DNA of 63,538 nt, counting the filler, from Octopus bimaculoides (Eukaryota), in assembly GCF_001194135.2 (NCBI RefSeq). It is 7 parts of 7 records of this genome, joined end to end, with 100 filler letters (N's around TTAATTAATTAA, not from the genome) between each part and the next. Parts side by side here need not be neighbours in the genome. Positions count along the whole stretch, not along the records: positions 60,382 to 62,382 come from NW_026363562.1; 6 more parts are not named here. One strand, given 5' to 3'. Shown one piece after another: positions 60,382 to 62,382 of this stretch. The position numbers were made by a program, and so were the translations under genes. The number at the start of each line of letters is the position of its first letter. The first letter of the stretch is position 1. Under the pieces are notes generated by a model. That model did no database searches. It saw only the letters and a program-made list of their open reading frames with translations, and was not told the origin of the DNA.

Positions 60382-62382
60382 AATGGGCGTACGTACGTTC
60401 AGGCCAAGGGCAACGGACGAAGTTCCGTAGGCCTTGGCTCGAACTGGCGTACGTACGTTCAGGCCAAGGGCCACGGACGAAGTTCCGTTGCACTTGGCTC
60501 GAGCTGGCGTACGTAAGTCCATACTAAGGACAACGGACGAAGTTCCGTAGCTCTTGGCTTGGACGGGCGTACGTACGATCAGGCCATAGGCAACGGACGA
60601 AGTTCCGTAGCTCTTTACTCGAACGGGACTACGTACGTTCAGGACAAGAGCAACGGACGAAGCTCCGTAGCTCTTCGACAGAACGGGCGGACGTTGAGGC
60701 AAGAGCTACGGACGAAGCTCCGTAACTCATCGACAGAACGTGGGTACGTTGAGGCAAGAGCAATGGACGAAACTCCGTAGCTCTTCGACAGAATGGTCGT
60801 ACGTTGAGGCAAGAGCAACGGAAAAANNNNNNNNNNNNNNNNNNNNNNNNNNNNNNNNNNNNNNNNNNNNNNNNNNNNNNNNNNNNNNNNNNNNNNNNNN
60901 NNNNNNNNNNNNNNNNNNNNNNNNNNNNNNNNNNNNNNNNNNNNNNNNNNNNNNNNNNNNNNNNNNNNNNNNNNNNNNNNNNNNNNNNNNNNNNNNNNNN
61001 NNNNNNNNNNNNNNNNNNNNNNNNNNNNNNNNNNNNNNNNNNNNNNNNNNNNNNNNNNNNNNNNNNNNNNNNNNNNNNNNNNNNNNNNNNNNNNNNNNNN
61101 NNNNNNNNNNNNNNNNNNNNNNNNNNNNNNNNNNNNNNNNNNNNNNNNNNNNNNNNNNNNNNNNNNNNNNNNNNNNNNNNNNNNNNNNNNNNNNNNNNNN
61201 NNNNNNNNNNNNNNNNNNNNNNNNNNNNNNNNNNNNNNNNNNNNNNNNNNNNNNNNNNNNNNNNNNNNNNNNNNNNNNNNNNNNNNNNNNNNNNNNNNNN
61301 NNNNNNNNNNNNNNNNNNNNNNNNNNNNNNNNNNNNNNNNNNNNNNNNNNNNNNNNNNNNNNNNNNNNNNNNNNNNNNNNNNNNNNNNNNNNNNNNNNNN
61401 NNNNNNNNNNNNNNNNNNNNNNNNNNNNNNNNNNNNNNNNNNNNNNNNNNNNNNNNNNNNNNNNNNNNNNNNNNNNNNNNNNNNNNNNNNNNNNNNNNNN
61501 NNNNNNNNNNNNNNNNNNNNNNNNNNNNNNNNNNNNNNNNNNNNNNNNNNNNNNNNNNNNNNNNNNNNNNNNNNNNNNNNNNNNNNNNNNNNNNNNNNNN
61601 NNNNNNNNNNNNNNNNNNNNNNNNNNNNNNNNNNNNNNNNNNNNNNNNNNNNNNNNNNNNNNNNNNNNNNNNNNNNNNNNNNNNNNNNNNNNNNNNNNNN
61701 NNNNNNNNNNNNNNNNNNNNNNNNNNNNNNNNNNNNNNNNNNNNNNNNNNNNNNNNNNNNNNNNNNNNNNNNNNNNNNNNNNNNNNNNNNNNNNNNNNNN
61801 NNNNNNNNNNNNNNNNTAGCACTTGGCTCGAACGGGCGTACGTACGTTCAGGCCAAGGGCAACGGACGAAGTTCCGTAGCACTTCGACAGAACGGGCGGA
61901 CGTTGAGGCAAGAGCTACGGACGAAGCTCCGTAACTCATCGACAGAACGTCGGTACGTTGAGGCAAGAGCAATGGACGAAGCTCCGTAGCTCTTCGACAG
62001 AATGGTCGTACGTTGAGGCAAGAGCAACGGAAAATGCTCCGTAGCCCTTCGACACAACGGGCGAACGTTGAGGTAAGAGCAACGGACGAATCTCCGTAGC
62101 TCTTCGGCAGAAAGAGCGTACGTTGAAAACAAGAGCAACGGATGAAGCTCCGTAGCTCTCCGGCAGAACGAGCGTACGCACGTTCAGGCCAAGTGCAACG
62201 GACGATGTTACGTAGCACTTTGCTAGAACGGGCGTACGTACATGCAGGCCAAGGGCAACGGACGAAGTTCCGTAGCTATTGGCTCGAACGGGCGTACGTA
62301 GTTTCAGGCAAGGGGCAACGGACGAAGTTCCCTAGCTCTTGGCACGAACAACCGTACGTAAGTTCAGGCCAAGAGCAATGAA
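60382..62382. repeat. CpG-rich palindromic satellite with 60-bp and 55-bp units (N gap 60827-61817)
   Basis: Loop anchors at 60418, 60478, 60538, 60598, 60658, 60713, 60768 and 60823, then 61867, 61922, 61977, 62032, 62087, 62143, 62203, 62263 and 62323. Confidence 0.95.

What the first reader, a model, noticed from the sequence alone, without database searches (positions are those of the whole stretch)
60382..62382. Satellite built from alternating inverted ~30-bp half-units with two dyads per repeat
Seen in sequence: each 60-bp unit is X followed by approximately the reverse complement of X. AGTTCCGTAGCACTTGGCTCGAACGGGCGT matches the reverse complement of ACGTACGTTCAGGCCAAGGGCAACGGACGA at 21/30 positions. 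Every arm can therefore pair either leftwards or rightwards. Dyad 1 is AAGNGC-A-ACGGA-[CGAAG(T/C)]-TCCGT-A-GCNCTT, with a near-constant loop and a retained A.A mismatch. Dyad 2 is CTTGGC..GAACG-[..CGTACGTA]-CGTTC..GCCAAG. One stem position shows three Watson-Crick states (G-C at unit 60418, A-T at 60658, T-A at 62203), although several units are mismatched there. The array is strikingly CpG-rich for this AT-rich window. Established knowledge: C-GAA-G forms very stable DNA mini-hairpins; palindromic tandem repeats occur as baculovirus hr origins/enhancers, as bacterial REP/BIME arrays of alternating orientation, and as dyad-rich centromeric satellites. Inference: this could be a cruciform-switching satellite, a hairpin-RNA/siRNA source, a recombinase or HUH-nuclease site array, or the relic of a viral origin. 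It sits alone between two artificial linkers, so host origin is unproven.
Basis: partly seen in the sequence, partly recalled or inferred. Interest (0 to 1): 0.72.

Follow-up and report, generated by a model that had tools for sequence, protein, structure and literature searches.

The report
Palindromic 55/60-bp tandem satellite array
This short scaffold is made entirely of a 55-60-bp tandem repeat carrying a conserved 30-bp imperfect palindrome; it is an ordinary kind of satellite DNA from an unidentified host, and its symmetry looks inherited from one old inverted duplication, not actively maintained.

Summary
The array is real. About 17.5 units are readable on the two sides of a 990-N gap, in two subfamilies of 60 bp and 55 bp arranged in blocks. 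The 60-bp consensus is X followed by rc(X): 21 of 30 Watson-Crick pairs about one axis, against 13.6±1.2 (maximum 18) in 2000 shuffles. The "two dyads per unit" follow automatically from that single symmetry. The 55-bp subfamily, half of the units, keeps only dyad 1, a 30-bp box AAGNGC-A-ACGGA-CGAAGY-TCCGT-A-GCNCTT. Its whole-unit symmetry is at chance level.

No covariation supports either stem. The "three Watson-Crick states" position is mismatched in 7 of 16 units (permutation p=0.11) and mostly reflects subfamily linkage.

The gap flanks are not continuous. The last 181 bp before the gap are a 96.7% copy of 61855-62035, so the array has a higher-order repeat.

CpG observed/expected is 1.45, and CpG sites are not hypermutable.

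Nothing related was found in prokaryotic genomes, viral contigs, metagenomes, phages, plasmids, Rfam, proteins or papers.

Verdict: a dyad-rich satellite of a known kind from an unknown host. Single strands could form hairpins, but the cruciform-switch, REP/BIME, HUH-site and viral-relic readings have no support. Interest is low.

The parts
60382..60645 (.). 60-bp-subfamily block A: a partial unit (columns 37-60) plus four 60-bp units starting at 60406, 60466, 60526 and 60586
   Evidence: TRF period 60; monomer table; alignment A1. The block's identity to its own reverse complement is 60-64% in register against about 44% off register.
60646..60826 (.). 55-bp-subfamily block A: units at 60646, 60701 and 60756 plus 16 bp. 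This is copy 1 of the higher-order block.
   Evidence: TRF period 55; 175/181 identical to 61855-62035.
60827..61816 (.). Assembly gap (990 N) inside the array. The flanks are out of phase and are not continuous.
61817..61854 (.). Partial 60-bp unit (columns 23-60). It contains the best-preserved dyad 2 at 61819-61860.
   Evidence: (I4).
61855..62130 (.). 55-bp-subfamily block B: 4 x 55 bp plus one 56-bp unit. 61855-62035 is copy 2 of the higher-order block. Unit 61855 is a hybrid with a 60-like left half and a 55-like right half.
   Evidence: The AT skew of +0.28 shows that strand symmetry is lost here.
62131..62382 (.). 60-bp-subfamily block B: units at 62131 (hybrid, 55-like left half), 62191, 62251 and 62311, plus 12 bp of the next unit
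60646..60675 (.). Type example of dyad 1, the conserved 30-bp imperfect palindrome AAGAGC-A-ACGGA-CGAAGC-TCCGT-A-GCTCTT. It has 11 Watson-Crick pairs, a fixed A.A mismatch and a 6-nt loop holding C-GAA-G.
   Evidence: As single-stranded DNA it folds at -8.7 kcal/mol, z = -3.8. This half of the unit diverges 7.9% from the subfamily consensus against 13.7% for the rest, p = 0.013.
61819..61860 (.). Type example of dyad 2, found in the 60-bp subfamily only: GCACTTGGC-TC-GAACG-GG-CGT|ACG-TA-CGTTC-AG-GCCAAGGGC, centred on the CGTACG core
   Evidence: The consensus folds at -11 kcal/mol, z = -3.5.

Best explanation
This is a non-coding tandem satellite of the eukaryotic type. The scaffold starts and ends inside the array.

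Origin of the symmetry (inferred). The unit most likely descends from one ancient inverted duplication of a ~30-bp segment, giving X.rc(X), which was then amplified head to tail. That single event creates both dyad centres.

Later history (shown).
- The two arms have since diverged by about 30%.
- The asymmetries are fixed in nearly all units: the A.A mismatch, the CGAAGY loop, T.G/C.A at columns 34-35/56-57 and G.A/G.T at columns 41-42/49-50. The symmetry is therefore inherited. It is not repaired between arms or kept by compensatory change.
- A derived 55-bp subfamily differs by a 4-bp and a 1-bp indel plus four left-arm substitutions. It lost dyad 2 and still spread.
- The array evolves by unequal exchange, block duplication and conversion. 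Evidence: alternating subfamily blocks, hybrid units at block junctions, and a multi-monomer block of at least 181 bp that is 96.7% identical between its two copies. Neighbouring 55-bp units are only 87-91% alike.

Possible constraint (inferred, weaker). The only part that looks constrained is the 30-bp dyad 1 box. Its stem, loop and mismatch are all about equally conserved. That fits a sequence-level constraint, such as a site for a dimeric DNA-binding protein (ACGGA-N6-TCCGT half-sites), or uneven homogenisation. It fits selection for base pairing less well.

Hairpins on single strands during replication or transcription are physically plausible. They are probably a by-product that favours slippage and array turnover.
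For: - Tandem structure and subfamilies.
- One-axis symmetry of the 60-mer, far above shuffles.
- Loss of symmetry in the 55-mer: plus AT skew +0.28 against about +0.06 in 60-type blocks.
- No covariation.
- Higher-order block.
- A60646 and B61855 differ at exactly the three subfamily-diagnostic columns 4, 18 and 27.
- Dyad 1 half more conserved: (Fisher p = 0.013).
- No coding or RNA-family signal: no protein relatives in any of the six frames, no Rfam family, no tRNA.
- No prokaryotic, viral, phage or plasmid relative.
- Precedents: short satellites built of alternating inverted units and dyad-rich satellites are documented.
Against: - The host, copy number and chromosomal location are unknown. 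No unique flank is present, and no eukaryotic genome or repeat library could be searched.
- Only 16-17 units are available, several of them non-independent, so power to detect weak compensatory evolution is low.
- The higher conservation of dyad 1, the very low folding energy of the strand (z = -8.1) and the extra-stable C-GAA-G loop motif leave room for a structural or protein-binding role.
- The inverted-duplication origin is an inference from symmetry. It was not observed.
Confidence: 0.6

Rival explanations
1. Array of binding sites for a dimeric sequence-specific protein. The conserved 30-bp box (half-sites ACGGA/TCCGT, 6-bp spacer) would be the functional element, repeated every 55-60 bp. 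It would act as an enhancer, origin or centromere-type platform, working like a baculovirus hr bound by IE1, the rDNA spacer enhancer repeats, or CENP-B boxes in alpha-satellite.
For: - The box is the most conserved part: 7.9% against 13.7% divergence, p = 0.013. Invariant columns cluster at columns 6-23.
- Loop and mismatch are as conserved as the stem. This is expected for a protein site and not for a pure hairpin.
- The box is retained in both subfamilies while dyad 2 is not.
- The layout, a direct repeat of about 60 bp with a 24-30-bp imperfect palindrome, equals that of an hr.
Against: - No protein is known for it.
- No viral match.
- hrs are AT-rich with 2-8 repeats and lie between viral genes. 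Here GC is 55%, at least 17 units are present, and there is higher-order structure with no flanks.
- No CENP-B box within one mismatch.
- The difference in conservation is modest and could come from uneven conversion.
Confidence: 0.15
2. Structure-selected non-B-DNA satellite. Hairpins or cruciforms at the dyads would be the selected feature, for example in centromere specification under the Kasinathan-Henikoff model, with two alternative pairing registers.
For: - Dyad symmetry is far above shuffles.
- Single-strand folding z = -8.1 for 566 nt and -7.4 for a 60-mer dimer.
- The C-GAA-G loop is a known stable DNA mini-hairpin motif (established knowledge).
- Dyad-rich centromeric satellites are a recognised class.
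Against: - No compensatory evolution.
- Mismatches are fixed, not repaired.
- The 55-bp subfamily lost dyad 2 non-compensatorily and still spread.
- The estimated extrusion cost is high because the arms are imperfect.
- The strict dyad patterns are present in only 5/17 and 1/17 units.
Confidence: 0.12
3. Source of hairpin RNA or small RNAs. Transcripts of the array would fold back and feed an RNAi/heterochromatin pathway.
For: The strand folds strongly, and 60-type blocks are 60-64% self-complementary in register. Many satellites are transcribed (review).
Against: No evidence of transcription. The stems are short and imperfect (5-6 contiguous pairs). The only Rfam match is mir-331 at E = 0.9, which is chance level.
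Confidence: 0.05
4. Contaminant, or an assembly artefact of a collapsed repeat. The scaffold would not represent a real 2-kb locus of the nominal host.
For: - There is no unique flank.
- The gap joins two near-identical block copies, a situation in which mate-pair scaffolding is unreliable.
- The quasi-palindromic sequence makes orientation ambiguous.
Against: - The two copies differ at 6 of 181 positions, three of them subfamily-diagnostic. They are therefore distinct copies and not one locus read twice.
- No match to any bacterial, viral, phage or plasmid collection.
Confidence: 0.06
5. Bacterial REP/BIME-type array, or an array of HUH-nuclease/recombinase sites.
For: Only the alternating-orientation palindromic layout.
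Against: - Zero exact hits for two conserved 19-22-mers in one genome for each of 185,579 prokaryotic species.
- The single metagenome hit lies inside a bacterial coding region with no repeat around it.
- No plasmid or phage match.
- No adjacent gene of any kind.
Confidence: 0.02

Closest known systems
Palorus subdepressus 72-bp pericentromeric satellite (Plohl et al. 1998, as summarised in PMC8122249)
   Same: A short monomer well below nucleosome length, built from alternating inverted units. The array is therefore quasi-palindromic with two dyad centres per unit.
   Different: The Palorus unit has AT-rich T2A5T spacers between its 22-bp inverted blocks. Here there is no spacer, the sequence is CpG-rich, and two length subfamilies occur.
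Tribolium satellites with inversely oriented subunits (TmSat2 704 bp, T. brevicornis 1061 bp; PMC13081366)
   Same: Intra-monomer dyad symmetry produced by inverted subunits, higher-order organisation, and a proposed but unproven hairpin/cruciform role.
   Different: The arms there are 300-470 bp, against 30 bp here. The macro-dyad array inversions seen in Tribolium cannot be assessed in 1 kb of sequence.
Dyad-rich centromeric satellites (Kasinathan & Henikoff 2018, PMC5889037)
   Same: Enrichment of short dyad symmetries over permuted sequence, predicted stable non-B structures, and absence of a CENP-B box.
   Different: A centromeric location and CENP-A binding are unknown here. The dyads in that paper are under 10 bp, whereas here a single symmetry spans the whole unit.
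Baculovirus homologous regions (hr) (e.g. PMC4535591)
   Same: Direct repeats of about 60-70 bp, each centred on a 24-30-bp imperfect palindrome. The palindrome is more conserved than the linker.
   Different: hrs are AT-rich, have 2-8 repeats per region and are flanked by viral genes. This array has 55% GC, at least 17 units and higher-order blocks, and no match in IMG/VR.
Primate alpha-satellite higher-order repeats
   Same: Multi-monomer blocks are much more alike (96.7%) than adjacent monomers (87-91% within a subfamily, 65-78% between subfamilies).
   Different: The monomer is 55-60 bp, not 171 bp. Only one block pair is visible, so the HOR period is unknown.
Bacterial REP/BIME
   Same: Imperfect palindromes in alternating orientation.
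   Different: REPs are dispersed in intergenic regions of bacterial chromosomes in small clusters. This is a long homogeneous tandem array with no prokaryotic match.

Membership tests
Satellite DNA (tandem repeat array) | Many head-to-tail copies of one unit filling the locus | tested here: met
   TRF scores 410/317/490 with periods 60 and 55. About 17.5 units cover all 1011 readable bases.
Satellite DNA (tandem repeat array) | Monomer subfamilies and higher-order periodicity from unequal exchange | tested here: met
   60- and 55-bp blocks alternate. A 181-bp block is 96.7% identical between its copies, against 87-91% for neighbouring units.
Satellite DNA (tandem repeat array) | High genomic copy number and a heterochromatic, centromeric or subtelomeric location | not testable with these tools
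   No reads, no flanks and no eukaryotic genome collection.
Dyad-rich (non-B-DNA) centromeric satellite | Dyad symmetry enriched over composition-matched permutations | tested here: met
   21/30 against 13.6±1.2 for the 60-mer. Folding z = -8.1. Not met for the 55-mer as a whole unit.
Dyad-rich (non-B-DNA) centromeric satellite | Association with CENP-A or centromere function | not testable with these tools
   Host unknown.
Selected DNA/RNA secondary structure | Compensatory (covarying) substitutions that keep the stems | tested here: not met
   observed pairing equals shuffled pairing. There is one candidate double change (unit 62191). Power is limited to 16 units.
Baculovirus hr | Direct repeats of about 60-70 bp, each with a 24-30-bp imperfect palindrome | tested here: met
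   55-60-bp units with a 30-bp imperfect palindrome; compare.
Baculovirus hr | AT-rich, 2-8 repeats per region, embedded between viral genes, several dispersed copies in a viral genome | tested here: not met
   GC 55%. At least 17 units and no flanking genes. No ORF has relatives.
Baculovirus hr | Sequence found in viral genomes | tested here: not met
   Three exact 19-22-mers gave 0 hits. The degenerate palindrome gave 8 single-site chance hits with no arrays. Unsampled viruses are not excluded.
Bacterial REP/BIME | Occurs dispersed in bacterial chromosomes | tested here: not met
   0 hits in 185,579 species genomes. The one metagenome hit is a chance match inside a coding region.
CENP-B-box satellite | TTCGNNNNANNCGGG motif | tested here: not met
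   0 matches with up to 1 mismatch. The 55-type unit has TTCGACAGAACGGG, with the spacing one base short.
CRISPR array | Constant repeats separated by unique spacers | tested here: not met
   All 60 columns are repeated (mean column identity 83%). There is no unique spacer.
Known RNA family / tRNA-derived repeat | Match to an Rfam model or a tRNA fold | tested here: not met
   Only mir-331 at E = 0.9, 20 bits against a gathering score of 80. ARAGORN finds no gene.

The most novel reading that the evidence does not exclude
The 30-bp imperfect palindrome (ACGGA-CGAAGY-TCCGT core with fixed flanks) could be a functional cis-element of a eukaryotic chromosome. It might be a site for a dimeric protein or a strand-specific GAA mini-hairpin, reiterated every 55-60 bp as a cellular counterpart of viral hr origin/enhancer arrays or as a centromere-specifying non-B-DNA satellite. 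The 55-bp subfamily would then be a natural experiment showing that only dyad 1 is required.
Probability: 0.1. Interest if true: 0.45.

Novelty: new member of a known kind. Interest (0 to 1): 0.17.

Why it matters
As it stands it matters little. It is one more dyad-rich satellite, on an orphan scaffold of unknown host.

Its modest value is as a clean small example. One inverted duplication explains 'two dyads per unit', and a derived subfamily shows which half of the symmetry can be lost.

If the host were identified and the array proved centromeric or protein-bound, the 55/60 contrast would give a ready-made test of the 'non-B DNA specifies centromeres' idea.

Tried and rejected
ORIGIN SEARCHES, ALL NEGATIVE
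- Exact 19-22-mers in prokaryotic genomes.
- Exact 19-22-mers in IMG/VR.
- JGI metagenomes. The one hit, L001, is a 19-20-nt chance match inside a bacterial membrane-protein gene with no repeat.
- Degenerate palindrome GCAACGGA-N6-TCCGTAGC in IMG/VR: 8 single-site chance hits that do not extend beyond the specified bases.
- blastn against phages and plasmids.
- Translations of all open frames of both consensus units against 5.8 billion protein clusters.
- Exact-product look-up of a 96-aa ORF.
- Twelve 12-17-mers in the full text of 8.3 million papers: only unrelated primers.
- Rfam and tRNA.

IDEAS REJECTED
- CRISPR: there are no unique spacers.
- tRNA/SINE origin: the GGCTCGAAC stretch resembles a B box only loosely, and ARAGORN is negative.
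- CENP-B box.
- Coding repeat: ORFs up to 529 aa exist only because the unit has few stop codons and the N gap reads as X.
- Methylation-driven decay: CpG sites mutate at 10.0% against 9.7% elsewhere.
- Reconstructing the HOR period from the 1209-bp offset: not possible, because the gap length is only an estimate and the 60-type units of A and B show no one-to-one correspondence.
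Full report
WHAT IS THERE

The piece consists of 445 readable bases (A, 60382-60826), 990 N (60827-61816) and 566 readable bases (B, 61817-62382). All of the readable sequence is one tandem repeat. TRF reports periods of 60 and 55 bp. Anchoring on the GGACGA core gives unit spacings of 60,60,60,60,55,55,55 in A and 55,55,55,55,56,60,60,60 in B.

I cut 16 complete units and aligned them, with column 1 at the first A of AAGNGC. Two subfamilies are plain.
- 60-bp type: AAGGGCAACGGACGAAGTTCCGTAGCTCTTGGCTCGAACGGGCGTACGTACGTTCAGGCC.
- 55-bp type: AAGAGCAACGGACGAAGCTCCGTAGCTCTTCGACAGAACGGGCGTACGTTGAGGC.

The 55-bp type differs from the 60-bp type in several ways:
- a 4-bp indel in the (CGTA)n core;
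- a 1-bp indel at column 60;
- four substitutions in columns 31-35 and one at column 55;
- the diagnostic sites column 4 (G/A) and column 18 (T/C).

The scaffold begins and ends inside the array, so there is no unique flank.

THE GAP

The two flanks are not continuous. A stops at column 16 of a 55-type unit and B starts at column 23 of a 60-type unit.

A 60646-60826 is 175/181 (96.7%) identical to B 61855-62035, unit for unit. The shared private variants include GCTACGGA...GTAACTCAT, CAATGGA...GAATGGTCG and CGGAAAA. Neighbouring 55-type units are only 87-91% alike, and the two subfamilies are 65-78% alike.

The flanks are therefore two copies of one multi-monomer block, that is, a higher-order repeat. 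The offset of 1209 bp depends on the estimated gap length. The 60-type units of A and B show no one-to-one correspondence, so the HOR period cannot be derived. Scaffolding by read pairs inside such an array is unreliable. The 990-N figure should not be trusted.

CHECKING THE SYMMETRY

However, the half-unit X is not present as a literal 30-mer; the closest copy has 2 mismatches at 62266. Y occurs at 60391 and 61840.

For the 60-bp consensus, a single circular symmetry axis gives 21 of 30 Watson-Crick pairs. In 2000 dinucleotide-preserving shuffles the mean is 13.6±1.2 and the maximum is 18. The real 60-type blocks are 60-64% identical to their own reverse complement in register, against about 42-45% out of register.

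One symmetry axis on a circularly repeated unit necessarily produces two dyad centres, between columns 15|16 and 45|46, exactly 30 bp apart. It also lets every arm pair to the left or to the right. These are one observation, not three.

The 55-bp consensus behaves differently. Its whole-unit symmetry is at chance: 12/27, with 1504 of 2000 shuffles as good. Its dyad 2 keeps only AACG/CGTT and folds no better than shuffles (-6.4 kcal/mol, z = -1.6). Its blocks have a strong strand asymmetry, with AT skew +0.28 to +0.35 against about +0.06 in 60-type blocks.

What both subfamilies keep is dyad 1, a 30-bp imperfect palindrome: AAGNGC-A-ACGGA-CGAAGY-TCCGT-A-GCNCTT. It has 11 pairs, a fixed A.A mismatch and a 6-nt loop.

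IS THE SYMMETRY MAINTAINED?

- Dyad 1: 91.5% of cells pair, against 90.8±0.7% when the 3' letters are shuffled among units (139/500 shuffles as high). One pair has double changes, in 2 cells.
- Dyad 2, in the nine 60-type copies: 81.3% against 80.8±1.3% (241/500).
- Strict Watson-Crick counting, since G.T is a mismatch in DNA: 154/176 against 152.2±1.7, p = 0.22. The result is the same after removing the duplicated HOR copies and stratifying by subfamily.
- RNAalifold recovers dyad 1 on its own, but with a covariation term of +0.31, which is no support.

The 'three Watson-Crick states' position (columns 4/27) is real but weak.
- It has 7 A-T, 1 G-C, 1 T-A and 7 mismatches (4 G.T, 2 G.A, 1 A.C). 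Permutation gives p = 0.11.
- The A-T state is simply the 55-type subfamily state. It is linked to C at column 18, which is a loop position, so this is linkage and not pairing.
- The 60-type consensus is a G.T mismatch.
- The G-C unit (60406) breaks the neighbouring pair.
- The T-A unit (62191) sits on an A27 variant. Three units with G at column 4 share that variant, and so does the partial unit at 61817.

The differences between the subfamilies in dyad 2 are not compensatory. There are four changes on the left arm and one change plus a deletion on the right, with a net loss of pairing.

The asymmetries between the arms are shared by nearly all units: the A.A mismatch, the loop, and columns 34/57, 35/56, 41/50 and 42/49. 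They therefore predate the present monomers and have not been repaired between arms.

Within the limits of 16 partly non-independent units, the evidence favours 'relic of one ancestral inversion'.

WHAT DOES LOOK CONSTRAINED

The dyad 1 half (columns 1-30) differs from its subfamily consensus at 7.9% of positions. The other half differs at 13.7% (Fisher p = 0.013, HOR duplicates removed).

Invariant columns cluster in columns 6-23 and at ACG 46-48. Apart from the subfamily-diagnostic column 18, the loop is as conserved as the stem. That pattern suits a sequence-specific site, such as inverted ACGGA/TCCGT half-sites 6 bp apart, or uneven homogenisation. It suits selection for pairing less well.

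PHYSICAL POTENTIAL

As single-stranded DNA, flank B folds at -133 kcal/mol against -89.9±5.3 for shuffles (z = -8.1). The dyad 1 hairpins fold at -6.4 to -8.7 kcal/mol (z = -3.0 to -3.8). The + strand loop carries C-GAA-G, a motif known to form very stable DNA mini-hairpins (established knowledge; not modelled by the energy parameters used).

Extrusion from duplex DNA is another matter. Hairpin energies on both strands minus the duplex energy give a cost of about +24 to +30 kcal/mol for dyad 1 and about +44 kcal/mol for dyad 2, before any relief from supercoiling (a rough nearest-neighbour estimate). The arms have only 5-6 contiguous pairs.

Hairpins on transiently single strands are plausible. 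A freely 'switching cruciform' is not favoured.

COMPOSITION

GC is 55% and CpG observed/expected is 1.43-1.45. CpG positions are not more mutable than others: 10.0% against 9.7% overall, and transitions 3.75% against 4.1%. This points to a host or region without heavy CpG methylation, or to very recent homogenisation (inference).

ORIGIN

I found nothing related in any collection.
- Prokaryotic species genomes.
- IMG/VR. A degenerate palindrome search gave 8 single-site chance hits and no arrays.
- JGI metagenomes: one chance 19-20-nt match inside a bacterial gene.
- Phages and plasmids.
- Rfam: only mir-331 at E = 0.9.
- tRNA.
- Protein clusters, using translations of every open frame.
- Sequence strings in the paper library.

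No eukaryotic genome or repeat library was available. The most likely home, a eukaryotic draft assembly as suggested by the N-gapped orphan scaffold, could therefore not be checked. Host origin remains unproven.

COMPARISON WITH KNOWN SYSTEMS

- The nearest architectural precedent is the 72-bp pericentromeric satellite of Palorus subdepressus. It consists of two octanucleotides alternating with 22-bp units of an inverted repeat.
- On a larger scale, the Tribolium satellites are built from inversely oriented subunits, and a hairpin/cruciform role is proposed for them but unproven.
- Dyad-rich, CENP-B-box-free centromeric satellites are a recognised class. Here no CENP-B box occurs within one mismatch.
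- The layout also equals a baculovirus hr, a roughly 64-bp direct repeat with a 24-28-bp imperfect palindrome. But hrs are AT-rich, have 2-8 repeats and sit between viral genes, and no viral match exists here.
- REP/BIME, CRISPR and tRNA-derived readings fail their defining tests (see the membership table).

VERDICT

It is a real tandem array and is really X.rc(X) in the 60-bp subfamily, but half of the units keep only one dyad and the covariation claim does not hold.

The best explanation (about 0.6) is an ordinary satellite with these properties:
- its symmetry is a legacy of one inverted duplication;
- it evolves by block duplication and conversion;
- its 30-bp palindromic box is somewhat better conserved, for reasons still open.

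The rival readings are a protein-site array (about 0.15), a structure-selected non-B-DNA satellite (about 0.12), an artefact or contaminant (about 0.06), a small-RNA source (about 0.05) and prokaryotic REP/HUH sites (about 0.02).

It is a new member of a known kind, and interest is low.

Noticed in passing
window 60646-60826 vs 61855-62035: The 181 bases before the gap are a 96.7% copy of a stretch inside flank B, unit for unit. This is a higher-order repeat block. The scaffold's gap therefore joins two copies of the same block, and its length is not trustworthy.
   Followed up: yes
window 61855-61909, 62131-62190 and 60646-60700: There are hybrid units at subfamily junctions. Unit 61855 has a 60-type left half and a 55-type right half; unit 62131 is the reverse. 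The two HOR copies 60646 and 61855 differ at exactly the three subfamily-diagnostic columns (4, 18, 27). This looks like a conversion or crossover tract ending near column 30.
   Followed up: partly
window 60382-62382: CpG positions are no more mutable than other positions (10.0% vs 9.7%) despite CpG observed/expected of 1.45. This hints at a host or region without CpG methylation.
   Followed up: partly
window 61855-62130 vs 60382-60645: AT skew is +0.28 to +0.35 in 55-type blocks but about +0.06 in 60-type blocks. This independently shows that the 55-type has lost strand symmetry.
   Followed up: yes
window 60675-60689 and every 55-type unit: TTCGACAGAACGGG resembles the CENP-B box TTCGNNNNANNCGGG, but the CGGG lies one base too close. 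No match within one mismatch was found anywhere in the piece.
   Followed up: yes
window 60629-62218 (- strand) and other frames: Long 'ORFs' (up to 529 aa) run through the array and across the N gap. They are artefacts of a unit with few stop codons (60 is a multiple of 3) and of N read as X. None has any protein relative.
   Followed up: yes
L001 2589-2608 (JAEEGL016869111.1): This is the only metagenome hit for the dyad 1 core. It is a single 19-20-nt match inside an apparent bacterial membrane-protein gene with no tandem repeat, so it is a chance match.
   Followed up: yes
window 60415-60430 and equivalents: The + strand loop ACGAAGT could form the C-GAA-G mini-hairpin with one bulged base. 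The complementary strand's loop (CTTCG) has no such motif, so any hairpin would be strand-asymmetric.
   Followed up: no
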